Position numbers and translations under genes: made by a program. From IMG/VR virus record IMGVR_UViG_3300049001_000044, positions 279,230 through 343,229 of that record: a DNA stretch of 64,000 nt. The stretch is one strand, 5' to 3'. Position 1 is the stretch's first letter. Each line of letters starts with the position of its first letter. The notes under the pieces are model-generated. The model was not told the origin of the DNA. It did not search any database and saw only the letters and a program-made list of their open reading frames with translations. Of the stretch, positions 3,848-57,077 are shown in pieces.

Positions 3848-5185
3848 TTAACCTCCCGTTTGGAACAAGTTCATTACGTCGTTACCCTTCTTCTGTCCGC
3901 CAATCGCGATCGGTGTTTCAGGGATAACGACTTGACGCTTACCAGGAACCTTCAGCTCTTGCTTCTTGCCAGCCCTCGAAGAAACAACCAGCGATACTGG
4001 ATCCCAACCAAGTCGTACGCTTGCACCAACACCGCCAGAGTTACGGGACTTCAAGATGTCGTACTGGATTTCGCCTTGCGACCGCATCAGATCATCTTGC
4101 TTGATACCAATCACGTAGTCAGAAGTGTTGATCTTGGAGATACCACCCTGAATGTGCGATTGATTCAGCTTCTCTGCTTCGATAGCTGCACGACCCAGCT
4201 GAGCTGCAGAAACCATGATGCAGTTGTAGTCAAAGCCCAGCGAACGAATCTCCTCTGTGACGTACTTATCCTTGATGAAGAGATTGTCAAGGGAGATGTT
4301 GTGAGTGGTGCCCATGATGTCGATGTAGTCGACGATGATGAAGTCAGGACGGAAACCATTCGCTTGTTCCAACTGTTGGAGATAAGCTTGGATGGTGTGG
4401 ATGTTGGTACGATTCTCTGCAAATCGCTTCACGAAGAATCTTCCGTAGCCCTTTGCACCAGCTTTCTCAACCGCTGCTGCGACCTTGTGCATGTTCTTCA
4501 GCAGATCAGCCTGGCTGATCGCGGACACCATCGAGTCTAGACGTTTCGTCACCACGCCTTCGGCCATCTCCAATGTGATGTAGATGCCGTTAAGACCTTG
4601 CTTCAGGAAGTTGTGGGCCAAGTTCAACATGTTCATCGACTTACCACCGCCTGAGTTAGCGAGGAACGTGATGAGTTCTTGTCGAGCCAGACCGCCACCG
4701 ATCAGCTCGTCAATCTCTGGAAGACCAGTGCTGATGCGTGATTGCGTCTGCAAAGTTGCTTCAAGACGAGCGGTTGGATCGGCGAAGTAATCGATACCAA
4801 TGTCCTTCTGCAGGCCAGTGGTAATGGCGTTCTTCAAGTTCTCAATAATGGCGCCCATGTCACCCTTCTTCAAGAGCTCTGGGCCAGCCAAGATCGCTTC
4901 AGTCACCGCACTATCGCGGCAGAACTTTTCGATCTCTTCACTGATGTATGTTGTCTCTGCACGAGAGATGACGCCAACATCATCCAACAGTTGGCCAGTT
5001 TCGGCACGGATGATTTGGATCTTTGGTACGTCTTTGTATTGGTTGAAGTAGTCGCTGAGGAACTTGACGGTCTTCTTCAGCGATGGGTCAAAATAGCTGG
5101 GCTTCAGGAGACCGGCAGTCAGTGCCATGAGGTCTCGGTTTGCGCACAGCGCGGAGAGGATCAGTCTTTGCTTTTCAATATCCAT
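3848..5185 (-). CDS. Replicative DNA helicase (T4 gp41/DnaB-like)
   Basis: Walker A ANSGGGKS, YITLEM, Walker B IIVDYID, KSRN; next to primase. Confidence 0.92.
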   Translation of the reverse strand: MDIEKQRLILSALCANRDLMALTAGLLKPSYFDPSLKKTVKFLSDYFNQYKDVPKIQIIRAETGQLLDDVGVISRAETTYISEEIEKFCRDSAVTEAILAGPELLKKGDMGAIIENLKNAITTGLQKDIGIDYFADPTARLEATLQTQSRISTGLPEIDELIGGGLARQELITFLANSGGGKSMNMLNLAHNFLKQGLNGIYITLEMAEGVVTKRLDSMVSAISQADLLKNMHKVAAAVEKAGAKGYGRFFVKRFAENRTNIHTIQAYLQQLEQANGFRPDFIIVDYIDIMGTTHNISLDNLFIKDKYVTEEIRSLGFDYNCIMVSAAQLGRAAIEAEKLNQSHIQGGISKINTSDYVIGIKQDDLMRSQGEIQYDILKSRNSGGVGASVRLGWDPVSLVVSSRAGKKQELKVPGKRQVVIPETPIAIGGQKKGNDVMNLFQTGG

Positions 5186-7107: not shown

Positions 7108-7142
7108 AGGTAAGGCTCCTTTCCTTGTGTCATAACACATAC

Positions 7143-7237
7143 GCTGGAGCTTACTAGAAGCGCCCAGAGGTGTTAGGACCGTTAAGATGATAGCTTCATC
7201 ATCATTAAGCAGCAGGACCTCTGGGAGGTCCTGCTGC
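7143..7237 (+). repeat. Dispersed ~90-bp intergenic element, copy E1
   Basis: Starts GCTGGAGCTTACTAGA (identical 16-mer to E5); ends in 12-bp perfect hairpin GCAGCAGGACCT-CTGGG-AGGTCCTGCTGC. Confidence 0.75.
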
Positions 7238-7342
7238 GAGGCGGTGGTCTACTTTCGATTTAGAGAGCAGAGCTTCGTTTTTATATTGCCCAGGTTGCAC
7301 GACCGAAGACTCCGACGGTCTCTGAGCTTGCTGCTTGACAGG

Positions 7343-7350
7343 TATTTATA
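7343..7350 (-). promoter_or_regulatory. Late promoter TATAAATA
   Basis: Exact T4 late consensus, ~235 nt upstream of transglycosylase start. Confidence 0.65.
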
Positions 7351-7367
7351 TGCTTTGCAGTGAGTAC

Positions 7368-7399
7368 ATTTTAACAAAATGATAACCTGGCGAAAACTG
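7368..7399 (-). promoter_or_regulatory. Early-type promoter CAGTTTTC-N18-TAAAAT
   Basis: Matches a motif repeated with identical spacing at about 10 intergenic sites. Confidence 0.65.
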
Positions 7400-7400
7400 C

Positions 7401-7428
7401 GCAAAATAAAAGGGCCCGAAGGCCCTTT
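7401..7428 (-). terminator. Rho-independent terminator
   Basis: AAAGGGCC-TTCG-GGCCCTTT followed by T-tract on minus strand. Confidence 0.8.
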
Positions 7429-7464
7429 GTAAACTGAGTGCTTAGGAGTTAGAACGACAGTATC

Positions 7465-12239: not shown

Positions 12240-12410
12240 TTATCCGTAGAATTTCGGGTTGATCGCCAGTACTTCCGGGAATTGCATCATCGATGTATCG
12301 ACGCTCTTGCCACGGTGCATGTAGTGGTACATCGCACGTAGTGCCAGGTCCAGCTTGTTTGCGTCTTTCGCTTTGATCGCGTCGTCAATATTCTGTTGCA
12401 GGTCTTTCAT
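12240..12410 (-). CDS. Small hypothetical protein (56 aa, not in track)
   Basis: MKDLQQNIDDAIKAKD..., overlaps upstream stop. Confidence 0.55.
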   Translation of the reverse strand: MKDLQQNIDDAIKAKDANKLDLALRAMYHYMHRGKSVDTSMMQFPEVLAINPKFYG

Positions 12411-12670
12411 TCTTCGTCTTCCTCGTCAATGAATTGTTCGATGTCTTCCATGGTCAGTACCGAGATGCCCATCGATTCAGCAGTGCATCCTGCCGGCAGG
12501 GTAATCGTGCGGTAGCTGAAGTCACCACCGGCGCAGCCGTAGTCGTCATAGTCCATGCGACCAGCATCGCTAGCTTTCTCCAGCGCGTCGATGACGGCGG
12601 GGTCCAGCACATAATCAACGTCGAAGCTGCCATCCGATTGATCGGTCAACAGTACAAAGAGAGTTACCAT
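12407..12670 (-). CDS. Acidic hypothetical protein
   Basis: 87-aa ORF with RBS AAGGAG. Confidence 0.65.
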   Translation of the reverse strand: MVTLFVLLTDQSDGSFDVDYVLDPAVIDALEKASDAGRMDYDDYGCAGGDFSYRTITLPAGCTAESMGISVLTMEDIEQFIDEEDEE

Positions 12671-12751: not shown

Positions 12752-13762
12752 TTAGAACGTCAGGAGCGAAGGCTTCTTCTTTGCAAGCTGATTGCTCACG
12801 ACACCATTGGGGCTCATGACCTTCTTGCCATTCGCAGAGAACATGTCAGCGAAGGTCTGAGCGTTTTCTGCGATTTGAGCCAAACCGAATTTGCCACAGA
12901 ACTTGGTGAAGTGGAAGTGCGAGAACTTGCCATGATGTTCCAGCTCGTAGTCGAGGGTCTCTTTCACCAGCTGGCGGATGTCTTCTGGCTGCGCGTGCAG
13001 ATCCATCAGCAGTTTGTTCTCTTCAAACAGCTCGCAGGTTTTGTAGTGAGTGACTTCACCGGTTTCAGGGTCAGTAAAATCCCACTCATGATTCAGCAGC
13101 TGAGTCAGCATGTAGTCGTCCGTCATTGCCTTCGCCAACTTCGTCTTCAGAACGCGCGGATAAGCTGTCATGACGTTATCGCCTGGATCGCCACGGAAAC
13201 ATTTCTCGAACATGAAGAAGTGAGGGTCGTCGCAAGTGCGTGGCTTGCCATCGTTAGGATCGATCAACGTGAAGTTCTTGTACTTCAGGAGTTGGACGAA
13301 GTCACGGTCACCGGAGATGCCAATGATTTCGTCTGCGCCTTCCAGCAAAGATTCGTCTTCCACACCATAGCGCTCAACGAAGCCAGCGAACAGATCATCA
13401 CCCTCAAGGCGAGGAGCGGAGAGGCAAGCTACTGCAGTGTGAGTGCGAGCCAGATCCTCAAAGCCCTTGATCAGTTCGAAGAACGGTTCCATCGAAGCGT
13501 CCTTCACTCGGTTACCCTTGTACAGCTTCTTCGACTTGCACTGTGCGGACTTGGTGTATTCCTTACGCCAGTTCTGACCACCTTCGAAGGTGACGACGAG
13601 TTGATCAGGGCGATACTTCTTGTAGTACTTGTTGAGGGTATTCAACGCGATGTGCATCGCAAGACCGGCCTTCTCCTCGGGGGTACCGGCAGGGCCGTAC
13701 TTGCCATGGGCTGCTGCAACTCGGAACAGAACGTTCGCGGTGTCTACAATCATTCGTTTCAT
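12752..13762 (-). CDS. rnh: RNase H / 5'-3' flap exonuclease (T4 rnh-like)
   Basis: IVDTAN, EGDD, SGDRDFVQL, RGDPGDNV motifs. Confidence 0.85.
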   Translation of the reverse strand: MKRMIVDTANVLFRVAAAHGKYGPAGTPEEKAGLAMHIALNTLNKYYKKYRPDQLVVTFEGGQNWRKEYTKSAQCKSKKLYKGNRVKDASMEPFFELIKGFEDLARTHTAVACLSAPRLEGDDLFAGFVERYGVEDESLLEGADEIIGISGDRDFVQLLKYKNFTLIDPNDGKPRTCDDPHFFMFEKCFRGDPGDNVMTAYPRVLKTKLAKAMTDDYMLTQLLNHEWDFTDPETGEVTHYKTCELFEENKLLMDLHAQPEDIRQLVKETLDYELEHHGKFSHFHFTKFCGKFGLAQIAENAQTFADMFSANGKKVMSPNGVVSNQLAKKKPSLLTF

Positions 13763-14112
13763 TCTTCGTCTTCCTCTTGATCCAGTTTTGCTGCACGAGC
13801 TGTTGCTTTTTCCACCATGCTCTCAAGCACGTTGTAACCAACCTGACCACCGCACATGTTGATGAACTCGTGATAGAATTCTTCGCTGCATGGCTGGTCA
13901 CTGACGCCCATTTCGAAGTCGTCGAATGAGTAGAATTGCAGAAATTCATTCGTGCCGAAGTAGTACTCGTCATCTTCAGTTAGAACGTTGGCGTCGAAAG
14001 CAAGTTGAACTATCGACATGTTCTTGTTGAACTCACGCTTGTCAGCAACGAAGCAGCAGTCGACATCGAACTCATCCGCATAGTCATGGGACATCTTTAC
14101 AAAAACGTACAT
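13759..14112 (-). CDS. Acidic hypothetical protein
   Basis: Likely start MYVFVKM with RBS GGAGA. Confidence 0.6.
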   Translation of the reverse strand: MYVFVKMSHDYADEFDVDCCFVADKREFNKNMSIVQLAFDANVLTEDDEYYFGTNEFLQFYSFDDFEMGVSDQPCSEEFYHEFINMCGGQVGYNVLESMVEKATARAAKLDQEEDEE

Positions 14113-26158: not shown

Positions 26159-26190
26159 ATTTTAGAACGTAGGAGGTGCTCGAAAAACTG
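26159..26190 (-). promoter_or_regulatory. Early-type promoter CAGTTTTT-N18-TAAAAT overlapping element E2
   Basis: Motif match with exact spacing. Confidence 0.65.
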
Positions 26191-26251
26191 CGTGTAGTGG
26201 CTGTCAACAGCTTTGCATGGAGGTCTCTGAGCACCTCTGGTAAGTCCCAGC
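26171..26251 (-). repeat. Dispersed element copy E2
   Basis: Minus strand GCTGGGACTTACCAGAGGTGCTCAGAGACCTCC...CTACA...GAGCACCTCC; begins right after the yqeY-like stop. Confidence 0.75.
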
Positions 26252-26683
26252 TTATTGCTGCTTCAACAGCTCGTCGATGATCTGCGAAGCCAGCTTACCG
26301 TCGAACTTGCCTGCGAAGTTGTCCTTCAGGTACTTCATGCAGGTACCTTTGTTCAGCTGCAGACCAGATGCAGCCAGCGCATCCATGATCTCCTGGCCAT
26401 TCATTTGTTTCGGCAGATAGGCAGACAGAATCTTCTTCTCTTGCTCCATCGTCTCAGCACTGTCGTACGACCTTTGAGCGTAGAGGATAGTGAGGGTGTC
26501 ATCAACACCCTTGATGAATTTCTTGATGACTTGAATGACCTCTTGGTCGTTCGTCTCGCGGTTGCCGTCGTTTTTACCGATGGTTGCCGCCTCACCGATC
26601 AGGGTGGTGAGCAAAGTTGCTTCTGCCTTGTTGCCGTTCTTTCGTGCTTGCAGTTGGTCTGCTTTCAGTTGTTGCATCAACAT
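26252..26683 (-). CDS. GatB/YqeY domain protein
   Basis: LKADQLQARK...EKKILSAYLPKQM. Confidence 0.85.
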   Translation of the reverse strand: MLMQQLKADQLQARKNGNKAEATLLTTLIGEAATIGKNDGNRETNDQEVIQVIKKFIKGVDDTLTILYAQRSYDSAETMEQEKKILSAYLPKQMNGQEIMDALAASGLQLNKGTCMKYLKDNFAGKFDGKLASQIIDELLKQQ

Positions 26684-31322: not shown

Positions 31323-32150
31323 ATGCAAGCAAAATATGTTGCTCTGGGTTCTTACACTCAGGCGAACCTAATCTCTGACCTTGCTGCCATTCTTTGTGGC
31401 GCGCAAGTTGCAGACCTCTCAGCAACTTGCGACAAGGCAAACACCACGATCGTAAGCACTGTTGCCCCTGGCTGGACTCTGGTAGATGCCAACGCATCTA
31501 ACTTAGGTAAAGTCATCTCTGCCCCAGATATGAATGGCAATCCGAAGTATGTGTACATCTACGCATCAGGCACTTCGCAGATTGCTATCAGAGTGTATGA
31601 GACTTGGAACAGTACCACCCACACTGGTACTAACCCAAGTGGCGCATACGTCTTGAGCAATGGTACGAGCTTCATGGTCTTTGGTACCCCGCAAACAGCA
31701 TACATCTCCGGTGGTGCTGACGGTTTTGGTGTGCTCGAAGTGTCTCGTGATGTCGCATACCTGCAAAACAACACTACCTACCCCGCTACCGTTGCTGGCG
31801 GAGCATACGGTTTTAGTAGCCCGACGGCCATGTCAATGCCTAGGGGCAAGAATATGACAGCTGCCGGTGACACCCTACCGTACCCTGTTCAATCCGCAAC
31901 GATCACGGCAAGATCCAGCAGTTCGATTTTGGCTGGAACCACTGCACGGCAAGACGCCAACGGTGTTCAGTACATTGAAGTACGTCCTATTTGGATCGCT
32001 CTATCCGACAACACGATCATCGGCCGCCTCTACGATATCGCAGAGATCACTCGTGGTGGCTACACTGTGTTCGACACGTTCAGCGACGGTGTTGACACGT
32101 GGATGGTTCTCCCAGGCTATAGTGGTTTGATGGCTCTCAAGGTAAAGTAA
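31323..32150 (+). CDS. Tail/virion paralog 1 of 3
   Basis: Shared motifs DLS..CDK, PGWT, YETWN..THTGTN, DT.SDG, ALKV. Confidence 0.75.
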   Translation: MQAKYVALGSYTQANLISDLAAILCGAQVADLSATCDKANTTIVSTVAPGWTLVDANASNLGKVISAPDMNGNPKYVYIYASGTSQIAIRVYETWNSTTHTGTNPSGAYVLSNGTSFMVFGTPQTAYISGGADGFGVLEVSRDVAYLQNNTTYPATVAGGAYGFSSPTAMSMPRGKNMTAAGDTLPYPVQSATITARSSSSILAGTTARQDANGVQYIEVRPIWIALSDNTIIGRLYDIAEITRGGYTVFDTFSDGVDTWMVLPGYSGLMALKVK

Positions 32151-32164
32151 GGAAAGGAATTCTC

Positions 32165-33061
32165 ATGTTCGCAAAATACGTAACCACTTCTTCGCCTACT
32201 CAGGCAAATGTGATCGCTGATATCGCCGCTCTTTTGGCGGGCGCAGCAATTACTGACTTGTCCTCTTCTTGCGACAAGTCTAACTCAACCCTCTTGAGCA
32301 CTGTTGCCCCAGGTTGGACCATTACTGACAACAATGCTGGCAGCTCAGGATACATCCTTTCAGCGCCAGACCTGGCTGGCAACACCAAGTACGTCAAGCT
32401 ATTTGCTTCTAATGCAACGTACTTGGATATTCAGGCGTATGAAACCTGGAATTCCACCTCGCACACTGGTACTAATCCAACCACCGCACTTGGTGCAGTG
32501 TCGACCTCTCCAGGCGTGACAGTAAATGTTGTCAATTACTTTTTCATTTTTGCAACCGCGAGATCATTCATTGTTATGGGTGGCGGCTCTAATCCAGCAG
32601 GCGGTGGCGGTATTGGTGCATTTGAATTCACGAGAGAAGCAGCTTATCTCCAAGGAACCACCTACCCAGCAGTATGCGTCGGTATGTTGGCAGGTCTTAC
32701 CAATAGTAACAAAAACATGAACATTTCACGTACTAAGAATCTCACTGCCGCAGGAGATACTGTACCAACGACTGCTCTCTCCGCAACAATTGCCGCTCGC
32801 AATGTCGCCGCTGGGGGCATTACCTCGCCAACCTCCTACCTCATAGATGCGAATGGCACATACTACAATGAAATTCGCCCTATTTGGCTAGCTACTTCTG
32901 GCGCGGGGGCGGCAATCTATGGCAAGTGCATTGATGTGTTCGAGACGACTAACTTAAGCGCGGTCGGTAACCCTCTTGACACTCTGTCAGATGGCACCGG
33001 TACTTACATGATCTTGGTGCAGACCACTGGTGTTGGGACTTTGATCGCTAAGGTAGCATAA
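32165..33061 (+). CDS. Tail/virion paralog 2 of 3
   Basis: Same motif series as paralog 1. Confidence 0.75.
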   Translation: MFAKYVTTSSPTQANVIADIAALLAGAAITDLSSSCDKSNSTLLSTVAPGWTITDNNAGSSGYILSAPDLAGNTKYVKLFASNATYLDIQAYETWNSTSHTGTNPTTALGAVSTSPGVTVNVVNYFFIFATARSFIVMGGGSNPAGGGGIGAFEFTREAAYLQGTTYPAVCVGMLAGLTNSNKNMNISRTKNLTAAGDTVPTTALSATIAARNVAAGGITSPTSYLIDANGTYYNEIRPIWLATSGAGAAIYGKCIDVFETTNLSAVGNPLDTLSDGTGTYMILVQTTGVGTLIAKVA

Positions 33062-33071
33062 GGAGAAACAC

Positions 33072-33986
33072 ATGCTGGTAAAATACGTAACTAATGCGTC
33101 TGTGACGACCATAAACATTATTAACGATGTGGCTTTGCTCTGCACCGGCGGAAGCATTTCTGACTTGTCTACAGGCTGCGATAAAGTGTACACGACAATC
33201 TTGGCTAAGATTGTTAACCCTGGTTGGACTCTAGTTGACAACGCCGCTCCAAATACCGGCGTTGTCATTTCATCACCAGACGTGGATGGCAACATCAAGT
33301 ATGTGAGGCTATCTCTGGTGGGCGCAAGTAATAATGTAAGCTTTGACTTGTTCGAATCATGGAACGCTACGACTCACACTGGTACTAATCAATCTTCCTA
33401 CCCTGCAGCTGTAACAGCCACCGGCGGGTCGAAGCAAACTTTTTATCTTTACGTCACCCCAAGAACAATCTACTTTGCTAAACCTGCAACTATCTCTAAT
33501 GGTATCGTGACTCACAATGGTGGTGGAACATTTGAGGTCTCTAGGGATGCCCTCTATCTAAAGGGTACAAACTACCCCGCGTTTTGCACGGGAGCCGACC
33601 AGGGGCTAATACCATATGGAAGCGGCAACAGTTATTCAATGGTGTTCCCAAGAATTAAAAATCAGTCTGGTGTTGGTGATGTTACGGGCACAAGCGCGCT
33701 TGGCATGACTGGTACAATATGCGCCAAATACTACGGTGCCGGGGGCACGGTTGGCTCGCCAGGAAGGCCGAATAGAACCGCTACTGATGCCACATACTAT
33801 GACTTCCGTGACATGTGGGTACTTTGTAGCCTTTCAGGAAGCAATGGAACTATCCTAGGCAAGATGTATGATGTCAAAGAAATTGCGTATGGCGCTGCAA
33901 ATACGGGTGACACTTTCAGTGATGGTACAGATACTTACATGGCATTCTTGACTAACTATGGCTGCTTTGCATTGAAGGTGGCATAA
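33072..33986 (+). CDS. Tail/virion paralog 3 of 3
   Basis: Same motif series, more diverged. Confidence 0.75.
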   Translation: MLVKYVTNASVTTINIINDVALLCTGGSISDLSTGCDKVYTTILAKIVNPGWTLVDNAAPNTGVVISSPDVDGNIKYVRLSLVGASNNVSFDLFESWNATTHTGTNQSSYPAAVTATGGSKQTFYLYVTPRTIYFAKPATISNGIVTHNGGGTFEVSRDALYLKGTNYPAFCTGADQGLIPYGSGNSYSMVFPRIKNQSGVGDVTGTSALGMTGTICAKYYGAGGTVGSPGRPNRTATDATYYDFRDMWVLCSLSGSNGTILGKMYDVKEIAYGAANTGDTFSDGTDTYMAFLTNYGCFALKVA

Positions 33987-36534: not shown

Positions 36535-38025
36535 TCAGAATACCTTAACCTGGTATTTGCTTGCAAATCGCTCACCATCTTCTACGGTGTTTACAAGAGG
36601 TTCGCCTTTGATGTTCAGCGAAGTGTTCAGCAGAACAGGGCAGCCGGTCTTCTCATACCACGCCTCTAGCACAGCATTGAAGAAGGGCGACTCATCGTGC
36701 GTAACGGTCTGTAAACGACCAGTACCATCAGCATGGGAGACTGCTGGTAGAGTTGTAGGAACCTTTACGACGCAGACCGCCTGCATGTATGGCACCTTGT
36801 CCAACTTTCCAGGCATGATGAAGTGATCGTGCTTGTATCTGTCCAATACAGCAGGAGCAAATGGTCGGAACTTCTGTCGCTTCTTGATTTCATTGACGCG
36901 ATCCTTCATCAAGTTACTGCGAGGGTCACCAAGTAGAGAGCGATTGCCAAGAGCTCTTGGCCCAAACTCAGCTCTACCAGTCATCACACCACAAACGCCC
37001 GTCGTAAGCAGCTCTTTCACCACGTCTGATGGGTCGATGTCAGAGTCGATGTTCGTACCAAGCATCGCGTTCTTCCAATTCAGTTGAGTGCGCAGATTAT
37101 TCGCGATCGCGCCTAAGGAGTTACCAGCATCGCCAGGATTAGGCATGATCCAGAAGTTGTCGAACTTATCGCCCAGTTTGGTTACTACTTCAGCGTTCGC
37201 AAGACAGTTCAAAGCAACGCCACCTGAGTAAACGATGTTCCTGCAGTTTGTCATGTCCAATGCCATCTCAATAACGCGCGAAATCTTGTGTGTTATGAGA
37301 GTCTGCGCCGCGAGAGCCAAGTCATATCTGCCTTGTTCGCCTTTCGCTTGACAAGCAAACTGGCTGCCTCTCATACCTCGATGGAGATTGGTTGTTTGGT
37401 GAAGATGACCATCGAAGAATTCCTCCTGCATTTCTGCTGCGATGAGGTCTGCACTTGAAGGATTGCCGTATGCGGCCATACCCATCAAGATGTACTCTTC
37501 TTCATTGGGCTTCAGACCTACCAAGTCGGTTACGGCACTGTAGAACAGACCGAGTGAGTGAGGATACTTCAGTGACCACACCCGCTTTAAGTTCGAACCT
37601 TTCCCATGCCAAATGGATGCAGTGGTTAGCTCGCCGATTGCGTCGATGACAACGCACACTGCCTCATCAAAACCTGAAGTGTAGAATCCACCGGCTGCAT
37701 GGGACTGGTGGTGATCGGAGTATTCGATCGGCGCAACAATTCCAAACTGCTTCATGTACTCTTTCGGAAAAGCCTGCATGACCTTGTCGAACTGCCCAGC
37801 CTTTATGAATCTCGCTTTTCTTCCCCATGGGTTCTCAAACCAAACGACCTTGCCTGGGGAACCAAACTGCAAAGCGTCTTGAATCAATTCGTTGTTGAGG
37901 TGTTCGTCGTTCTTAATCCTACTGTACCTTTCGGCATGGCCAGCAAAGAGGATGTCTTTCGTGACCGAATCTACGACCGAAATCGAAGCATCATGGTTAT
38001 CGGCGTTGACGCCCCAGATAATCAT
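36535..38025 (-). CDS. Carbamoyltransferase (NodU/CmcH/TobZ family)
   Basis: HDAS, ERYSRIK, HHQSHA, GGVALNC, EFGPRALGNRS, RPFAP, LNTSLN. Confidence 0.93.
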   Translation of the reverse strand: MIIWGVNADNHDASISVVDSVTKDILFAGHAERYSRIKNDEHLNNELIQDALQFGSPGKVVWFENPWGRKARFIKAGQFDKVMQAFPKEYMKQFGIVAPIEYSDHHQSHAAGGFYTSGFDEAVCVVIDAIGELTTASIWHGKGSNLKRVWSLKYPHSLGLFYSAVTDLVGLKPNEEEYILMGMAAYGNPSSADLIAAEMQEEFFDGHLHQTTNLHRGMRGSQFACQAKGEQGRYDLALAAQTLITHKISRVIEMALDMTNCRNIVYSGGVALNCLANAEVVTKLGDKFDNFWIMPNPGDAGNSLGAIANNLRTQLNWKNAMLGTNIDSDIDPSDVVKELLTTGVCGVMTGRAEFGPRALGNRSLLGDPRSNLMKDRVNEIKKRQKFRPFAPAVLDRYKHDHFIMPGKLDKVPYMQAVCVVKVPTTLPAVSHADGTGRLQTVTHDESPFFNAVLEAWYEKTGCPVLLNTSLNIKGEPLVNTVEDGERFASKYQVKVF

Positions 38026-38098
38026 TGTCTGATCTCCATTATATAAAGTGCGATGAAGTACTTATTCAAATTGATTTGTAACAAGTTTTACACTTAAC

Positions 38099-38130
38099 CT
38101 GTTTACAATCAGCGCGAACTTTAGTACAAT
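38099..38130 (+). promoter_or_regulatory. Strong early-type promoter CTGTTTAC-N18-TACAAT
   Basis: GTTTACA/-10 arrangement like T4 early promoters. Confidence 0.7.
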
Positions 38131-38162: not shown

Positions 38163-39029
38163 ATGAAGAAAATCAATGTGGCGGCAACTGTCCTGGTATC
38201 GATGATCCTCTCGGCCTGTGGCGGTGGAGGCGGTGGTAGTTCCACCCAAACCCCACCAGTCGCACAAGTCCCGGTCTCCCTGCCTATCCTCAACATTAAC
38301 GACCAACTCACCAAGTCCGCAAATGCTGACACCCTGGGCTTCGAGCCTGCGAACATGTCCCACACCTCGGGCGAACTGCAAACCAACACTGGGTTCTGGG
38401 GAGTGAAGTCGGCTTCCGCCTACTACGAGAACGTGGTGGGGACGATCGACCCGAATACGAACATCGCCAACGTCACCTTCAACTGGGACATCACGTCCTC
38501 GCAAACCCCTGGCGTTGTGAACTTCTCCAACATCACCTACGGCCTGCACCCTGGCTCCGCCTTCTCCACCACGAAGAAGCTCCCTGTGCGAGTGACGAGC
38601 ATGGGAGACCAGGTGGTAAATGCGGATGTGAAGACGAGCTGCGAGACCACGTGCTCCTACCAAACGATGCTGGACGTCTTCGTGATGAGTTCGAATAGCA
38701 CGAGCAACGCGGACATCGGAACCGAGATCGTCATTCTGACGGATCGCAACATCGGTCCTTCTGATCTGACGGGTGAAACAGCAACGATCGGCGGCGTCAC
38801 CTACAAGGTCGTGCACAACGGCTTCATCACCAACTGGAACGCCATCCAATACTTCGCGCCCATCGGTACCCCGATTAACTCGATGAAGATTAATGTCAAG
38901 GACTTCGTCAACGACGCTTTGCAACGTGGCTGGATTAAGAGCACCGACTACCTGGTCTCCATCGAACTGGGCACGGAAGTAATCCAGGGTAAGGGCAAGA
39001 CCGAGATCAAGAATCTGCACTTCAACTAA
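38163..39029 (+). CDS. Glycoside hydrolase family 12-like (endoglucanase fold) lipoprotein
   Basis: Lipobox LSAC plus poly-Gly; NFSNITYG, YQTMLDVF, GTEIVIL (nucleophile Glu), YLVSIELGTEV (acid/base Glu). Confidence 0.72.
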   Translation: MKKINVAATVLVSMILSACGGGGGGSSTQTPPVAQVPVSLPILNINDQLTKSANADTLGFEPANMSHTSGELQTNTGFWGVKSASAYYENVVGTIDPNTNIANVTFNWDITSSQTPGVVNFSNITYGLHPGSAFSTTKKLPVRVTSMGDQVVNADVKTSCETTCSYQTMLDVFVMSSNSTSNADIGTEIVILTDRNIGPSDLTGETATIGGVTYKVVHNGFITNWNAIQYFAPIGTPINSMKINVKDFVNDALQRGWIKSTDYLVSIELGTEVIQGKGKTEIKNLHFN

Positions 39030-39050: not shown

Positions 39051-39075
39051 AAGGGTAGCGTAGGCTACCCTTTTT
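39051..39075 (+). terminator. Rho-independent terminator after GH12 gene
   Basis: AAGGGTAGC-GTAG-GCTACCCTTTTT. Confidence 0.8.
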
Positions 39076-39082
39076 GACGTGC

Positions 39083-39171
39083 GGACCTCCCAGAGACCTC
39101 CTACCTACTTGATGTAGAAGTTAGTGTCGAAATAGGCTATGCATCTCTGGACCTCTCTGGTAAGCTCTAGC
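39083..39171 (-). repeat. Dispersed element copy E3
   Basis: 55/75 ungapped identity to E4 by manual alignment; begins at the stop codon of 39167-39946. Confidence 0.8.
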
Positions 39172-39946
39172 GATAGTAAGAGTGATGCATGTCCTTGATT
39201 GCGTAGAAGTCATCTACTGAATCCATGCCCAAGACCTCTGCTCGATACATGATCTCTGGGAAGTTACTAGCAACCTTCATGTCCAAGTTAATGGCCTGTC
39301 CGTACTTCGTAAGCCTGGTCCCTGGTCCAAGAACATGATAGTTATCGATCCTCCGTTTTGGCGCTTCACCCTCGCGAATCTTTCGGAAGATATCGCAGAC
39401 CAGATCCATACCCCACGAGTCACCGAAGAAGATGCAATCTGACGCATTGAATTGGTTGTACTCTAATCCCATTCGATAGTTGTGCGGGAAGTAAATCGTG
39501 CGATCACCAATCCAATTGTCTCTTAATTGATCCATCACGCTGGTGTCAGGGTCAAAGACGTTATCGTACCGACATTTGAACACGACATCGTAGCGGAAGC
39601 CCATCTCAATCTCATGTGCACGCTTAAGATGGTTGGCAATCATCATCGACCAATACAAACTGCCAAAAGGAACGTATCCCATTGGCTCCTGCGCCTTGAA
39701 CAAATCTTCTTGCGTCTCAATGACGTAGGAAATTGGATTGAATTGTAACAGCTGTTCAGTCAACCAGTCCTTGTCAAGTTGTTGGTACTCGCCTATTGAA
39801 TGATCAGGAAGTTTCCAAGTGTTGTAGTCCCAAGCATGACAGAAGAAGTCAACTTGAACTCCTTCTGCATTAAAATATCTGAGGATAGATTTCCGAGCGA
39901 ACTCAATCGACCTAGGTTGCCCGGATAAACAGACTGCGATTCTCAT
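39167..39946 (-). CDS. Putative glycosyltransferase-like protein
   Basis: MRIAVCLSGQPR, FFCHAW, YDVVFKCRYD, SDCIFFG. Confidence 0.6.
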   Translation of the reverse strand: MRIAVCLSGQPRSIEFARKSILRYFNAEGVQVDFFCHAWDYNTWKLPDHSIGEYQQLDKDWLTEQLLQFNPISYVIETQEDLFKAQEPMGYVPFGSLYWSMMIANHLKRAHEIEMGFRYDVVFKCRYDNVFDPDTSVMDQLRDNWIGDRTIYFPHNYRMGLEYNQFNASDCIFFGDSWGMDLVCDIFRKIREGEAPKRRIDNYHVLGPGTRLTKYGQAINLDMKVASNFPEIMYRAEVLGMDSVDDFYAIKDMHHSYYR

Positions 39947-40451
39947 AATTGACACACTCAGTGGATAGGGAAAGGGTTTGCAGATGGTAATAGAACTTGG
40001 CGGCGTCATCTACGCTTGGACCGCGGATTTGATTGACGGGAATGTTCTTGAGATTAGTGTGGTACTCACACGCCCTATCGAATTCCCAACTGCGAGCGAT
40101 GAACACGCATGGGTTAACACTCGTCAGCCAATGCTTCTTGTCGAAGCCACCTGTCATGTAGTAGATGAAGTTCTTTTGAAGGTCGACCTTCTTGTCAGCA
40201 TCGTACACCATCTCGATGTGCCTTACGTCGAACATCACATCAGTGTCGTACGCCATACAGATTTTGAATTCGACGTGAGTCTGAAATTCAGCTGTCTTCT
40301 TCTTGTGCGATACAGTTTCGAGGGCAAGAAACTTGTCTTCGTCAAAGTGATGGAAGAAGGTCATTGGGAATGGGAACCACTTCTGAAGCTTAGCTTGAAG
40401 TTCAGTGGTGTCCACACTCTTGGTTCCGTAAAAGCAAACTGCGTAAGTCAT
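39912..40451 (-). CDS. Hypothetical protein, distantly similar to downstream gene
   Basis: YAVCFYG start; late glycan operon context. Confidence 0.6.
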   Translation of the reverse strand: MTYAVCFYGTKSVDTTELQAKLQKWFPFPMTFFHHFDEDKFLALETVSHKKKTAEFQTHVEFKICMAYDTDVMFDVRHIEMVYDADKKVDLQKNFIYYMTGGFDKKHWLTSVNPCVFIARSWEFDRACEYHTNLKNIPVNQIRGPSVDDAAKFYYHLQTLSLSTECVNYENRSLFIRAT

Positions 40452-42413: not shown

Positions 42414-43110
42414 GCTTGATGTATGCCTCTAAATCTTCAGGAGTTCCCACACCATGCATTTCGTCAACTGGCATGGTAATTACTTTGTGACCCAGCGCTA
42501 CGTTTTGAGTGTAGACTGGAGCAACGTAGAATTCGTTCTTGTAGCGGATGTTCTTCTTAATCATTAACTCCGCTGCATCAACGAACTGACTACCCTTGTA
42601 CCAAAAGTAGAGACCTGCTGTGGCATGAGTGCTGACGGGTACCTTCTCAACGACTTCAGTTACGAACCCATGCTTATCCAGCTTCGCGAAGCTCCACTTT
42701 GGATCGGTATCTTCGAACGTCATGATCACACCATCAGCGTGTGTGTAGAGAGGAGTGACACTTGCTTCGTTGAACTTGATGATGTTGTCAGAGTTCATGA
42801 TCGCCAATGGCTCATCATTGTTAATGAGGTGCTTTGCTTGAAGCACGGTACATGCGGCTCCCTCAGTCACGCCATCAATGACGACCACATCACATCCTTC
42901 GTATCGTTCTTGAAGGAAGTTCTTCACGTCGTATTTCTCAACGTGCTCTTTCTGGACGATAAAGATCAGATGTCTAATTGCAAGAGGGAACGAATCTACG
43001 ACATGCTCAATCATCGTCTTACCAAGGAACTTGATGAGGGGCTTTGGGTCAGTGTATCCCGCCGCACTGAAGCGGGACCCTAAACCCGCCATTGGAATGA
43101 GAAGGTTCAT
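42388..43110 (-). CDS. Sugar-phosphate nucleotidyltransferase
   Basis: IPMAGLGSRF, PKPLI, GAACTVL, VVEK, GVGTPEDL. Confidence 0.85.
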   Translation of the reverse strand: MNLLIPMAGLGSRFSAAGYTDPKPLIKFLGKTMIEHVVDSFPLAIRHLIFIVQKEHVEKYDVKNFLQERYEGCDVVVIDGVTEGAACTVLQAKHLINNDEPLAIMNSDNIIKFNEASVTPLYTHADGVIMTFEDTDPKWSFAKLDKHGFVTEVVEKVPVSTHATAGLYFWYKGSQFVDAAELMIKKNIRYKNEFYVAPVYTQNVALGHKVITMPVDEMHGVGTPEDLEAYIKHETDRAPR

Positions 43111-51256: not shown

Positions 51257-51315
51257 ATTTGCTCCTTTGTCGTATAGCTTATTTTATACGAGAAGCAACC
51301 TTACGAAATCAATAT

Positions 51316-51414
51316 CCTGGGGCTTACCAGAGGTGCTCAGAGATGTGTGAGTAAGTTCAACACTAACAACTACATCGAAGTAGTAGGAGGTCTCTGAGCA
51401 CCTCTGGTCCCAGC
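51316..51414 (+). repeat. Dispersed element copy E4 with 18-bp perfect terminal inverted repeat
   Basis: ACCAGAGGTGCTCAGAGA (51326-51343) / TCTCTGAGCACCTCTGGT (51391-51408). Confidence 0.8.
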
Positions 51415-51415
51415 G

Positions 51416-51446
51416 CAAAAAAAATCCCACTCGAAGTTGAGTGGGA
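51416..51446 (-). terminator. Rho-independent terminator
   Basis: TCCCACTC...GAGTGGGA plus long T-run on minus strand. Confidence 0.75.
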
Positions 51447-51479
51447 CAAAAAGGGATCGATGATCCCTGCTGAAGAAGG

Positions 51480-51884: not shown

Positions 51885-52163
51885 GTTCCCTCCTTCGGGA
51901 GTTCGTAGTTAGGAACATAATACACAAGTTTCGTTGAGTTGTAAACTAGAGAAGTGTAAAAGTTGTTACAGCTTTTATCTGAAGAAGATCAACACGTCTG
52001 CTGAGACTAGGAACACAATCCCAAAGGACAGGCCAGTCACCCATCTAGATAGCGTGCCAACCTTCTTGACCAGTGGATCAAAGTTGGTTTCTCTGAATTT
52101 GTCGAACTCTTCCTGTGTGAAGAGATCATTTCCATGATATTTCATTTCTGTTCCTTTTGCGAT

Positions 52164-55188: not shown

Positions 55189-55721
55189 GTTTTGATAAGC
55201 AGACCCTCTTCGTCGAGGATCCGAAATGCGGAGGTTAAAATCTTGGAGGCGTGCTGGAAGTGGAAGCCGTGTGCCTTGTCTCGATCAGCATTTCCTGCTA
55301 CGTTGAGGCACTCGACGTTGTTATTTACGATGAAGTAGACCAGCTCGGCTGCCTTCATGTCGTAGTCTACGCCATCAAGAAGGAGGGAGAGGCATGGCTT
55401 CTTTGCTGCATTCACATAGCGGAGAGTTAGCACTTCCCCTGCAGTGTCAAAGTTGGATGCTAGTCGGACGGTGGCGTCGCCTTCATACGCATTGGCCCTA
55501 GTGCGCGGTGGATAGTCTCTCGATGAGGAGACCGTCAAATTGAATTGGGCGAGAGTGGGATCATCACCTAACGCAGTGCGATAGCCTCGTGCAATGTGCC
55601 CACCTGTCTCAATTTGAAAGTCACGAGCAACAAACAGACCGGCCTGATCTGCACCGGTCTGTGCGCCGCTGATGACCTTACGTAACCCTGTGTAGGGCAG
55701 GTCAAGTAGCTTGTGATTCAT
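55158..55721 (-). CDS. SLOG-superfamily protein (putative molybdenum-carrier/YpsA-like)
   Basis: [20 protein letters not shown]. Confidence 0.75.
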
Positions 55722-56568
55722 TCTCTTCCATCTTGTATTTGGTTTGGTCGATGAATGCTTGGATCTGTTCAGGGGTCAGATCATCGAGCTTCGGAATCAC
55801 AGGCATAACCCGCAGTAGTAGGTCACCCCTGTTGCTCTGCTTGGCGTCAGTCCAATACCCCTTGCCCTTGATCTTCAGCAGCTTGCCTGCTTCGAATCCA
55901 GATGGGATGCGGACAGTGCCAGTGCTGCCATCTACTGTGAAGACCGACTTGAAACCGCCCGTCATGATAGTGAACCAATCCACGAACATGGTTTGAGTGA
56001 TGTTGCCACTTCCTTCCTTTGCACCACCATACAGCCATGGCTCAGTAGCCCACACGACATTCGCATCTTCAACGTCAATGTCGAGCACCAAATCGATCGT
56101 ATAGTCTAGCCCACCATTCTTGCCAGCGACGGTCTTCAACTTCATGCCAGGCTTCATACCTGGACCGATGTCTACCGTCTCGATGTAACCGGCAACCTTC
56201 GTCAAGTCGACTTTCTTCGTGACACCAGTGAATGCTTCCTTCAGGGAGATTTTGATGGTGACTTGGTAGTGGCGAGCCCGTTTCATCTGCTCATGTTGGC
56301 TTCGAGCTCTGTTGATCTCTTCCTCGAAGTCATTCATGGTCTTGCTGTAGTTGGACCAGAAGTTCGGATTGACGGGGTCTTCCTGTTTGGATTCCAGGAA
56401 CTCGTACGCCTCTTTCATCTCCTTGAACTTTCCCTCGACCTCTGCTTCCTTGCCGGGATTTCGATCAGGGTGGTACTTCATGGATAGCTTACGATACGCC
56501 TTCTTGATCTCGTCATCAGAAGGTTTACCAGTCAGGCCCAACAGTGCGAGTGCTTTCGCTCGATTCAT
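55702..56568 (-). CDS. dnaJ: DnaJ/CbpA-like chaperone lacking Zn finger
   Basis: J domain KYHPDRN; C-terminal KGKGY...GDLLL. Confidence 0.88.
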
Positions 56569-56591
56569 CTTACACTTTCAAAAATCAGGAA

Positions 56592-56676
56592 GGCCCAGAG
56601 ACCTCCAGGCTTTCCTATGTAGTTGCTTATGACTTTGCAGTGAGAGGTGCTCAGAGCACCTCTAGTAAGCTCCAGC
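56592..56676 (-). repeat. Dispersed element copy E5 with perfect palindrome AGAGGTGCTC-A-GAGCACCTCT
   Basis: Palindrome at 56643-56663; begins 2 nt after stop of 56679-57077. Confidence 0.8.
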
Positions 56677-56678
56677 AG

Positions 56679-57077
56679 TTATGCTTTTGCAGCGCACAGA
56701 ATCTTTTCGACATCGATCTGCGTACGCAGTTCTTTCAGGAGGAACAGGAGCAGGAAGCTCAAGCCCAAGTTGATCAGGTCGATCGTACCGATTAGCCAGT
56801 GACCGGTGAAGACGAGGTAGATGGTGGTGAGGATCGAGACAGCGCGCGAGAACATCAGCATTAACTTTTTCGGTTCCTCGGGCATCGTCGCCTTCGACAG
56901 GTCTGCCTTTGCGATTGCAACGAAGACCACACTAACCAGCAGCACCTGCAGCAGAGTCATCCCTACGATGATGAATGCCGCAATGTTGTAGAAGCCTTCC
57001 ACGCCGGTCAGCTCCTTCGCAGCGAGCAGAGCAGGGACAAGGGCGACCAACAGCAGAGTTTTCAGGTTTTTCATCAT
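56679..57077 (-). CDS. Membrane protein
   Basis: 3-4 hydrophobic helices. Confidence 0.7.
   Translation of the reverse strand: MMKNLKTLLLVALVPALLAAKELTGVEGFYNIAAFIIVGMTLLQVLLVSVVFVAIAKADLSKATMPEEPKKLMLMFSRAVSILTTIYLVFTGHWLIGTIDLINLGLSFLLLFLLKELRTQIDVEKILCAAKA

What the first reader, a model, noticed from the sequence alone, without database searches (positions are those of the whole stretch)
56643..56663. Core quasi-palindrome AGAGGTGCTC-W-GAGCACCTCT used in different arrangements
Seen: E5 holds a perfect 10+1+10 palindrome. E4 has the same arms split into an 18-bp terminal inverted repeat around a 47-nt spacer. E2 has both a near-palindrome (GGAGGTCTCTGAGCACCTCT) and a distal GAGGTGCTC arm. 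A lone GGTCTCTGAGC core lies at 7317-7327. Inference: a 1-nt loop cannot form an RNA hairpin, so a dimeric DNA-binding protein or recombinase site is favoured. The MITE-like form of E4 suggests rearrangement between half-sites.
Basis: partly seen in the sequence, partly recalled or inferred. Interest (0 to 1): 0.6.

Follow-up and report, generated by a model that had tools for sequence, protein, structure and literature searches.

The report
Fixed-length intergenic inverted repeats in phage
The 21-base palindrome is one variant arm of a roughly 100-base repeated element that sits about 26 times between genes of a 343-kb soil jumbo phage. Its two conserved arms are always 54 bases apart, which resembles bacterial REP/BIME repeats and points to a protein-binding punctuation site; its function is not proven.

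Summary
AGAGGTGCTC-A-GAGCACCTCT lies at 56643-56663, and its arms recur at E2 and E4.

It is not a stand-alone site. It is the 5' block of one copy (E5, 56593-56676) of a ~100-nt element. That element occurs about 26 times in the 343,229-bp jumbo-phage genome holding the window. All good copies are intergenic.

Each copy has two GC-rich blocks built from CAGAG/CTCTG pentamers 10 nt apart. The blocks flank an AT-rich interior of variable sequence. Anchor-to-anchor spacing is 54 nt in 26 of 34 copies and 53-56 nt in all.

A sister phage, about 75% identical in coding DNA, has an element at all 8 orthologous sites that I could check. The arms are mostly kept, and the interiors are often replaced.

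A copy's two arms pair no better with each other than with arms from other copies (p=0.89). Folding shows no strand bias. At least six copies start directly after an intrinsic terminator.

The phage has no RAYT, tyrosine or serine recombinase, RNase III, ParB or HU/IHF gene. I found no target-site duplications and no Rfam match.

Best reading, at moderate to low confidence: a BIME/PeSL-like DNA-level protein-binding punctuation element. The E5 palindrome looks like a quasi-palindrome perfected by template switching. An RNA-level role is not excluded.

The parts
56593..56676 (-). E5, a complete copy of the element. It lies between the stop of a 132-aa gene (56679-57077) and the start of a DnaJ homologue (55702-56568).
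   Evidence: nhmmer E=1.6e-10. The anchors CTGAG (56654) and CTCTG (56600) are 54 nt apart. Flanking genes.
56643..56663 (.). The reported perfect palindrome. It is the 5' block of E5, in which the family consensus AGAGGTGCTCAGAGACCTCC is replaced by AGAGGTGCTCTGAGCACCTCT.
   Evidence: The same variant occurs at genome position 194597. The 54-nt spacing is kept, so the change was by substitution and not by deletion.
56589..56606 (-). 3' block of E5 (GGAGGTCTCTGGGCC). It forms a small hairpin followed by a T-run just before the DnaJ start codon.
   Evidence: Flagged as terminator-like by the consensus scan. That is a pattern match only.
51314..51408 (-). E4, the most symmetric copy, with an 18-bp inverted repeat and a 47-nt spacer.
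   Evidence: nhmmer E=2.6e-23 (it is a seed sequence). MFE is about -51 kcal/mol on either strand. Anchors are 54 nt apart.
51411..51448 (-). Intrinsic terminator that ends 2 nt before E4 begins, in the sense of transcription.
   Evidence: 9-bp stem followed by TTTTTTTT.
51283..51312 (-). Sigma-70-like promoter (TTGATT-N18-TATAAA) directly downstream of E4. It is highly conserved in the sister phage.
   Evidence: Read. Conservation. This is inference from consensus and was not found by the strict scan.
39091..39170 (-). E3, a copy that overlaps the stop codon of gene 39167-40009. It lies at a convergent junction with a GH12 gene on the + strand and its terminator (39053-39076).
   Evidence: nhmmer E=1.7e-14. 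Also. Anchors are 54 nt apart.
26170..26251 (-). E2, a copy that starts 1 nt after the stop of a YqeY-like gene. Its 3' block lies in the spacer of a promoter with -10 TAAAAT.
   Evidence: The ortholog in sister contig L143/L163 keeps 19 nt of the 5' block exactly and has -10 TACAAT at the same place.
7143..7242 (-). E1. Its 5' block is a perfect 12+3+12 palindrome (7210-7236). Its 3' block carries the GTAAGCTCCAGC tail (7143-7173).
   Evidence: Anchors are 54 nt apart. The sister phage has only a quasi-palindrome at the 5' block.
7264..7330 (-). Its anchors are about 51 nt apart.
   Evidence: Read. It was not detected by nhmmer, so this is inference.

Best explanation
**What it is**
The palindrome is a variant arm of a lineage-specific, ~100-bp interspersed intergenic element. 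In the sense of transcription the element has three parts:
- a 5' block, CCAGAGGTGCTCAGAGACCTCC
- a 49-nt AT-rich interior of free sequence
- a 3' block, GAACAYCTCTGRGCMCCTCTGGTAAGYCCCAGGATAT

**How I think it works**
I propose that it acts on double-stranded DNA as a fixed-geometry binding module. A sequence-specific protein would read the CAGAG/CTCTG pentamers, which lie 10 bp apart on one face of the helix in both arms. The AT-rich, ATCA-containing centre would let the DNA bend so that the arms come together.

The module sits at the borders of transcription units: after stop codons or terminators, and before sigma-70-type promoters. There it would insulate or punctuate neighbouring units. 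Possible modes are a roadblock, a topological barrier or an operator-like effect on the adjacent promoter.

**Side effects**
The copies recombine with each other and undergo template switching within their quasi-palindromes. That would account for swapped arm modules and for perfect palindromes such as those in E5 and in the 5' block of E1.

**Shown versus inferred**
- Shown: the family, its anatomy, its placement, its spacing, its conservation, and the lack of co-evolving pairing.
- Inferred: protein binding, bending, insulation and template switching.
For: **Family and placement**
- 26 HMM loci; all but one weak hit, which I left out, are intergenic.
- CAGAG-N5-CAGAG occurs 23 times, 22 of them intergenic.
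- Same-strand pentamer spacing peaks sharply at 10 nt.

**Fixed geometry**
- Anchor spacing is 54 nt in 26 of 34 copies across both phages, and 53-56 nt in all.
- Yet the interiors average only 34% identity, against 25.5% for shuffled sequence.
- Flanking intergenic DNA differs in length between orthologs, by 13 nt at E1 and about 5 nt at E2.

**Conservation**
- All 8 orthologous sites checked in a sister phage are occupied.
- At g10416, E2 and E4 the arms are identical or nearly so, while the interiors are unalignable.

**Sequence rather than pairing is conserved**
- A copy's own arms pair no better than arms from different copies: -24.5 against -26.1 kcal/mol, permutation p=0.89.
- The interior has no helix at fixed positions.
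- Folding energy shows no strand bias: -857 against -869 kcal/mol summed.

**Centre and context**
- The centre is 65-73% AT and the arms 25-40% AT. ATCA/CATC motifs cluster at one interior position.
- At least six copies begin 2-15 nt after an intrinsic terminator, so they are poorly placed to be transcribed.
- In E2 and its ortholog the 3' block lies between the -35 and -10 of a promoter.
Against: - No binding protein is identified. The phage has no HU/IHF, no ParB and no recombinase gene.
- About 20 of 25 copies share one orientation relative to transcription. A purely symmetric DNA site would not need that, whereas an RNA role or spread together with a promoter would explain it.
- 13 copies follow a stop codon directly with no terminator in between. 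Three lie between apparently co-transcribed genes. These must be transcribed.
- About half the copies can form a long hairpin of 12-18 bp.
- In 8 copies a U.G wobble at one stem position is tolerated in the sense strand, against 1 C.A mismatch (read). This is a weak hint of sense-strand pairing.
- The distance from the element to the next promoter varies from about 5 to 55 nt, so there is no fixed activator geometry.
- In E1 and g252984 the interior, not the arms, is the better conserved part.
- No expression data exist.
Confidence: 0.35

Rival explanations
1. **RNA-level element.** Transcribed as a 3' UTR or intercistronic segment, the arms would form a hairpin that does one of three things: stabilises the upstream message, serves as a processing site (host RNase III or E, as at the T7 intergenic sites), or binds an RNA-binding protein through its conserved single-stranded motifs (GGAGG, CAGGAUAU).
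For: - 13 copies abut or overlap the upstream stop codon, and 3 lie between co-transcribed genes.
- There is an orientation bias relative to transcription.
- The best copies have long stems. E4 folds at about -51 kcal/mol.
- A 7-bp core helix is paired in 94% of copies.
- Sense-strand U.G is tolerated 8 times, against 1 C.A.
Against: - There is no compensatory evolution: own arms against foreign arms gives p=0.89.
- Folding energy shows no strand asymmetry.
- Only about half the copies can make a stem long enough for RNase III.
- At least six copies start right after an efficient-looking terminator and stand before the next promoter.
- Rfam gives nothing.
- The phage has no RNase III gene, although a host enzyme could act.
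Confidence: 0.25
2. **Selfish or relic repeat.** A REP/MITE-like element that spread in an ancestor and now has no function for the phage. Its uniform length and arms would be kept by gene conversion among copies.
For: - It shows a mosaic of interchangeable arm modules (A-type GTGCT against B-type AGGCC or GACCC).
- The sister phage's ortholog of g276008 is 65% identical to a paralog (g152666) but about 35% identical to its own ortholog.
- Its position relative to terminators and promoters varies.
- The family is restricted to this phage and one sister. Five relatives at 50-57% DNA polymerase identity lack the motif.
Against: - All 8 orthologous sites are retained across about 25% coding divergence, with invariant pentamers and exact spacing.
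- There are no target-site duplications and no transposase, RAYT or recombinase gene.
- No multi-copy source was found in 185,579 prokaryotic species genomes.
- The interiors have not been homogenised, so conversion alone does not explain the shared length.
Confidence: 0.2
3. **PeSL-type recombination cassette border.** The repeats would exist mainly as homology patches that shuffle small genes between related phages.
For: - The context is the same as PeSLs: stem-loop, then sigma-70-like promoter, SD and start codon (PMC4122927, PMC2839356).
- Gene-content differences from the sister phage lie directly beside three elements: g10416, g252984 and g276008.
Against: - Three or four of about 15 gene differences lie next to 8 elements, and about 2 would be expected by chance. 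This is my own rough count.
- The 83-aa gene inserted at g252984 carries no second copy of the element.
- The conserved unit excludes the promoter.
- This would explain a consequence of the repeats, not the 54-nt rule.
Confidence: 0.1

Closest known systems
E. coli REP/BIME elements, especially BIME-1 (two inverted REPs around a long linker that often carries an IHF site; PMC3333891)
   Same: - Strictly extragenic, imperfect palindromic units.
- Paired in inverse orientation around a linker, with mosaic, interchangeable unit types.
- Located at the ends of transcription units.
- Similar density: about 0.08 per kb here against about 0.13 per kb in E. coli.
- An AT-rich centre containing ATCA motifs, which recalls an IHF-type bend site.
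   Different: - It is in a phage genome, not a bacterial chromosome, and has only about 26 copies.
- There is no conserved GTAG or CGTC tag, only a loose RTAS next to one block.
- The genome has no RAYT gene.
- The linker here is free in sequence but fixed in length, whereas the BIME-1 L linker is conserved in sequence.
- The arms are arrays of pentamers in 10-nt phase rather than one 30-40-nt hairpin.
PeSLs (promoter-early stem-loops) of T4-like phages (PMC2839356, PMC4122927)
   Same: - Repeated intergenic motifs in a large lytic myovirus-type genome.
- A stem-loop placed just upstream of a sigma-70-like promoter, SD and start codon.
- Found among small genes of unknown function.
- Implicated in recombination between relatives.
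   Different: - In PeSLs the repeated unit is the terminator-like stem-loop together with the promoter. Here ordinary terminators and promoters flank a separate, conserved ~100-nt unit.
- There is no clear excess of indels at the elements.
- PeSLs have not been reported to show a fixed 54-nt geometry.
Halovirus HF2 intergenic repeats (58-bp and 29-bp classes that carry promoters; PMC8707807)
   Same: Virus-specific classes of intergenic repeats of fixed length, spread through the genome.
   Different: - The HF2 repeats are themselves promoters.
- Here the arms occur in both orientations, the interior has no consistent -35/-10, and the promoters lie outside the unit.
Stoperators of cluster A mycobacteriophages (from my own knowledge, not checked here)
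   Same: - Some two to three dozen intergenic sites across the genome.
- An orientation bias with respect to transcription.
- Proposed to block elongating RNA polymerase when bound by a protein.
   Different: - Stoperators are single 13-14-bp asymmetric sites bound by the immunity repressor of a temperate phage.
- Here the sites are ~100-bp and bipartite, and the phage has no integrase.
T7 intergenic RNase III processing sites (from my own knowledge)
   Same: A family of related hairpins of roughly 60-100 nt between genes of a polycistronic phage transcript.
   Different: - Half the copies here lack a long stem.
- Pairing does not co-evolve.
- Many copies lie beyond terminators.

Membership tests
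REP/BIME | Short imperfect palindromic units confined to extragenic DNA | tested here: met
   The blocks are 20-26-nt quasi-palindromes (GGAGGT-CTCTGAGC-ACCTCT), and the one in E5 is perfect. All good copies are intergenic.
REP/BIME | Units paired in inverse orientation, separated by a linker (BIME) | tested here: met
   5' and 3' blocks are inverted, with anchors 54 nt apart.
REP/BIME | Conserved GTAG (or CGTC) tetranucleotide at the foot of the palindrome | tested here: not met
   Only a loose RTAS (GTAG, ATAG, TTAG, GTAC) lies next to the GGAGGT block in about 9 copies, and the column is not conserved.
REP/BIME | Cognate RAYT (TnpA-REP, Y1 HUH) gene in the genome | tested here: not met
   PF01797 has no match in the complete phage record. 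The host is unknown and could not be tested.
REP/BIME | The same repeat is abundant in the host chromosome | tested here: not met
   The 18-mer gives only single chance hits in 185,579 species genomes. The true host may be absent from that set.
PeSL | Stem-loop immediately upstream of a sigma-70-like early promoter, SD and start codon | tested here: inconclusive
   A -10 such as TACAAT, TAAAAT or TATAAT follows about 12-14 of 26 copies, at 5-55 nt. Three copies lie at convergent junctions and three lie directly before a start codon. The promoters were read by eye.
PeSL | Excess of indels or replacements at the elements between close relatives | tested here: inconclusive
   Three or four of about 15 gene differences are adjacent to elements, with about 2 expected. 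Only about 50 kb of the sister phage is available.
MITE | Terminal inverted repeats plus target-site duplication | tested here: not met
   The inverted repeats are present, but the flanks of the full-length copies share no direct repeat.
MITE | Presence/absence polymorphism between close relatives | tested here: not met
   All 8 orthologous sites are occupied in both phages.
Integron attC | R''/R' core sites (RYYYAAC / GTTRRRY) and an IntI tyrosine recombinase | tested here: not met
   The conserved ends are CTGGGACTTACCAGAGG, not GTTRRRY. PF00589 has no match.
Structured RNA family (Rfam) | Match to a curated covariance model | tested here: not met
   No match at gathering score in the 64-kb window. 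No tRNA or tmRNA was found.
RNase III site / functional RNA hairpin | Base pairing maintained by compensatory change | tested here: not met
   Pairing of own arms against foreign arms gives p=0.89. Only the invariant 7-bp core pairs family-wide.

The most novel reading that the evidence does not exclude
The elements are a previously undescribed kind of phage chromosome-architecture site. An unknown phage or host protein, possibly acting with a bending protein or the phage's own type II topoisomerase, would bind two arms of phased CAGAG pentamers held exactly 54 bp apart. This would partition a 343-kb genome into insulated transcription or supercoiling domains. In effect it would be a viral counterpart of BIMEs, defined by a molecular-ruler constraint rather than by sequence or hairpin structure.
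Probability: 0.25. Interest if true: 0.65.

Novelty: new variant of a known kind. Interest (0 to 1): 0.45.

Why it matters
Interspersed intergenic repeats are well studied in bacteria (REP/BIME). In phages they are known mainly as promoter or terminator motifs, such as the PeSLs of T4-like phages and the intergenic repeats of halovirus HF2.

This family differs in one useful way. Its sequence-free interior has a rigidly kept length between two arms that are conserved in sequence but whose pairing does not co-evolve. That separates a spacing constraint from both a hairpin constraint and simple common descent.

If a protein reads this geometry, the element would give a way to study how very large phage genomes organise and insulate their many small transcription units. 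It would also supply a compact, portable DNA module for testing.

If the repeats have no function, they are still a clean natural example of quasi-palindrome perfection and ectopic conversion in a virus.

Tried and rejected
- **The E5 palindrome arose by deletion of the interior between two arms.** Rejected, because E5 keeps the 54-nt anchor spacing.
- **The arms are promoters.** Rejected, because the arm motif occurs about equally on both strands (10 against 11) among genes that are almost all on one strand.
- **There is a promoter inside the interior.** I found no consistent -35/-10 at fixed positions.
- **Mixed orientation of the elements.** My first reading, taken from the HMM strand calls, was an artefact of the near-symmetric arms. 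In the sense of transcription about 20 of 25 copies agree.
- **The element derives from a host REP.** Only chance single hits in prokaryotic genomes.
- **tRNA-like or known RNA.** ARAGORN and Rfam are both negative.
- **The same element occurs in more distant relatives.**
  - Five complete or nearly complete relatives at 50-57% DNA polymerase identity lack the motif.
  - A crude repeated-word scan of 22-kb loci from nine such relatives, plus 50 kb of Ralstonia phage RsoM2USA, found no analogous family. One apparent repeat, in L127, lay inside coding sequence.
- **Collection scan with a 14-mer.** It returned only chance hits.
- **Sequencing runs.**
  - Only the source soil metagenome holds the DNA, and only as contigs. 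No RNA run holds it.
  - The one read-laying run, of 6,000 letters, showed only self-matches to paralogous copies.
- **Searches not used.** I ran neither the large protein searches nor any structure prediction, because the finding is non-coding.
- **Genetic code.** Only table 11 was used.

Full report
**1. The observation**

Window 56643-56663 is AGAGGTGCTC-A-GAGCACCTCT, a perfect 10+1+10 palindrome. The exact 10-mer occurs five times in the window, at 26229(-), 51329(+), 51396(-), 56643(+) and 56654(-). About 0.12 would be expected by chance.

The other details hold.
- E4 has an 18-bp inverted repeat (51326-51343 and 51391-51408) around a 47-nt spacer.
- E2 has the near-palindrome GGAGGTCTCTGAGCACCTCT plus a distal GGAGGTGCTC arm.
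- A GGTCTCTGAGC core lies at 7317-7327.

**2. Where the window lies**

The window is bases 279230-343229 of a 343,229-bp IMG/VR virus record from a soil metagenome. The record has 127-bp terminal repeats and an estimated completeness of 100%.

The window encodes a family B DNA polymerase, a DnaB-type helicase, the two subunits of a type II topoisomerase, a carbamoyltransferase, a DnaJ homologue and a YqeY-like protein. A thymidylate synthase gene also shows up by DNA similarity.

The nearest isolate by DNA polymerase is Ralstonia jumbo phage RsoM2USA, at 47% amino-acid identity. Its paper does not mention intergenic repeats. Nearly all genes are on the minus strand. My own rough gene caller gives 526 genes and 88% coding.

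**3. The real unit**

Repeat finding showed that the palindrome arms belong to longer repeats of about 80 nt. An HMM built from six copies found 26 loci in the genome, with E-values for non-seed copies down to 1e-14.
- One weak hit inside an ORF (121834) was left out.
- One copy, at 87830, was added after comparison with the sister phage.

Five copies lie in the window:
- E1: 7143-7242
- E2: 26170-26251
- E3: 39091-39170
- E4: 51314-51408
- E5: 56593-56676

A probable degenerate sixth copy at 7264-7330 contains the 'lone core'. All good copies are intergenic.

Read in the sense of transcription, the consensus is:

accaGAGgtGCtCAGAGacCtcc - 49 nt of low information - g.acatCTCTGgGC.cCTCTggTaag.tccag.atat

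The arms are built from pentamers (CAGAG on one side, CTCTG on the other) spaced 10 nt apart. CAGAG-N5-CAGAG occurs 23 times, 22 of them intergenic. Ten is by far the commonest same-strand spacing of these pentamers in the genome.

**4. The 54-nt rule**

The distance from the inner pentamer of the 5' block to the first CTCTG of the 3' block is 54 nt in 26 of 34 copies, counting 26 in this phage and 8 in the sister. It is 53-56 nt in all of them. The two apparent 64-nt cases are register effects of a mutated or duplicated pentamer.

The 49-nt interiors can be stacked without gaps. Yet they are on average only 34% identical, against 25.5% for shuffled sequence. The centre of the interior is 65-73% AT, while the arms are 25-40% AT. 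An ATCA/CATC motif clusters at one interior position.

**5. Placement**

In the sense of transcription the usual order is: stop codon, often an intrinsic terminator, the element, a sigma-70-like promoter, the SD, and then the next gene.
- At least six copies start 2-15 nt after a terminator's T-run. E4 is one of them (terminator 51448-51411).
- Thirteen copies follow or overlap the stop codon with no terminator between.
- Three lie at convergent junctions, before a terminator (g2265, g231812 and E3).
- Three lie directly before the next start codon (g10416, g252984 and E5).

About 20 of 25 copies share one orientation relative to transcription. That count includes the one copy in a block of plus-strand genes. 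E2, E3 and E5, all in this window, are the inverted exceptions.

**6. Relatives**

Pattern scans of viral, metagenomic and prokaryotic collections gave true hits only in contigs of one sister phage: L009/L181, L143/L163, L155, L156, L183 and L221. These are 72-80% identical to this phage in coding DNA. Prokaryotic genomes gave only single chance hits. Five jumbo relatives at 50-57% DNA polymerase identity lack the motif.

All eight orthologous intergenic sites that could be compared carry an element in both phages. How they differ varies by site.
- At g10416, E2 and E4 the arms are identical or nearly so, and the interiors and flanks are unalignable.
- At E1 and g252984 the interior is kept and the changes cluster in the 5-nt spacers between pentamers. 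There, A-type GTGCT alternates with B-type AGGCC, GACCC or GCGCT.
- At E4 the inner flanks of the two arms (ACCTCC and GAACAC) have changed places between the two phages.
- The 5' block of E1 is a perfect 12+3+12 palindrome here but only a quasi-palindrome in the sister.
- The sister's copy at g276008 resembles a paralog (g152666, 65%) more than its own ortholog (about 35%). That points to ectopic conversion.

Gene-content differences lie directly beside three elements. By my rough count this is not clearly above chance.

**7. Structure tests**

About half the copies fold into a 12-18-bp outer stem, and the rest form only local hairpins. Summed MFE is the same on both strands, -857 against -869 kcal/mol.

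The 5' arm of a copy pairs no better with its own 3' arm than with the 3' arms of other copies: -24.5 against -26.1 kcal/mol, permutation p=0.89. The only helix found across the family is 7 bp, CTCAGAG with CTCTGRG, paired in 94% of copies. A 5-bp extension is paired in 74%. Both are made of the invariant pentamers, and no helix occupies fixed positions in the interior.

So it is sequence and spacing that are conserved, not pairing. Rfam and ARAGORN find nothing.

**8. Genes that could act on it**

The complete genome has no match to Y1_Tnp (RAYT), Phage_integrase, Resolvase, RNase III, ParB_N or HU/IHF. The flanks show no target-site duplications.

**9. What the E5 palindrome is**

In E5, and in the copy at genome position 194597, the 5' block reads GGTGCTCTGAGCACCTC instead of GGTGCTCAGAGACCTCC. 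The 54-nt spacing is unchanged.

Several coordinated substitutions have therefore turned the family's quasi-palindrome (AGAGGT / 8-nt loop / ACCTCC) into a perfect one. This is what intramolecular template switching in quasi-palindromes would produce. That link is my inference from established knowledge of quasi-palindrome mutagenesis.

The predicted fold uses a 9-bp stem and a 3-nt loop.

**10. Interpretation**

The family, its anatomy, placement, spacing and conservation are shown. The function is not.

I favour a DNA-level module that binds a protein, at a confidence of about 0.35. The reasons are:
- invariant pentamers in helical phase
- a ruler-like spacing across a sequence-free, AT-rich centre
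- no co-evolution of pairing
- no strand asymmetry in folding
- copies placed between a terminator and the next promoter

Three facts keep an RNA-level role alive, at about 0.25:
- the orientation bias
- the many copies that must be transcribed
- the long stems of the best copies

A selfish or relic repeat kept uniform by conversion (about 0.2) fits the mosaic arms. It fits poorly with 8 of 8 orthologous sites retained and with the length rule. A PeSL-like role in shuffling genes (about 0.1) would be a consequence rather than a cause.

**11. Comparison with known systems**

The closest are E. coli BIME-1 elements: two inverted REPs around a long linker that often carries an IHF site, found at the ends of transcription units and bound by IHF, Pol I and gyrase (PMC3333891). 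Next come the PeSLs of T4-like phages, a stem-loop just upstream of a sigma-70-like early promoter that is implicated in modular shuffling (PMC2839356, PMC4122927). The halovirus HF2 intergenic repeats, which carry promoters, are a looser parallel (PMC8707807).

This family fails the REP membership tests for a GTAG tag and a RAYT gene. It also differs from PeSLs because the promoter lies outside the conserved unit.

I therefore class it as a new variant of a known kind, namely interspersed intergenic palindromic repeats. Its unusual trait is the fixed 54-nt geometry.

Noticed in passing
window 38077-38108 and 51939-51970; genome-wide, for example G000 5088-5130, 42716-42760, 83507-83550: A second family of intergenic repeats: (GTACACAGGCAAAA)TTGTAACA-N~13-TGTTACAAT. 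TTGTAACA occurs 17 times, 15 of them intergenic. It reads as a palindromic sigma-70-type promoter, with -35 TTGTAA and -10 TACAAT being reverse complements of each other, 17 nt apart and preceded by a TG. One site was picked up by the promoter scan (51945-51917, TTTACA-N17-TATTAT).
   Followed up: partly
window 7141-7464 (intergenic region containing E1): Apart from the arm cores of E1, about 200 nt of this non-coding region is roughly 97% identical to the sister phage (L221), while the flanking genes are about 78% identical. It may be an unusually constrained leader or small RNA, or a recent exchange between the two phages.
   Followed up: no
G000 252728-252979 (outside the window) against L009 4470-4480: An 83-aa gene with its own SD is present in this phage and absent from the sister. 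It is inserted exactly between the upstream stop codon and the element, with ATAAAG/TATAAG microhomology at both junctions.
   Followed up: partly
window 31323-33986 (+): Three tandem paralogous genes (275, 298 and 304 aa) share a 44-nt conserved stretch (31595, 32437, 33350). They lie in one of the few plus-strand blocks.
   Followed up: no
window 12405-12424 and 13757-13776: An exact 20-nt repeat, TTTCATTCTTCGTCTTCCTC. On the coding strand this reads GAGGAAGACGAAGAATGAAA, so it is an SD plus start region shared by two genes 1.35 kb apart.
   Followed up: no
window 55702-56568 (-), 26252-26683 (-), 36535-38025 (-), 38163-39029 (+): Genes that resemble host genes: a DnaJ homologue with both the J domain and the C-terminal domain, a YqeY-like protein, a carbamoyltransferase, and a GH12 glycosyl hydrolase on the opposite strand with its own terminator.
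   Followed up: partly
L221 2212-3063 (-), sister phage: A 283-aa ORF on the strand opposite to its neighbours, with no counterpart in this phage. It may be a mobile gene such as a homing endonuclease. I did not examine it.
   Followed up: no
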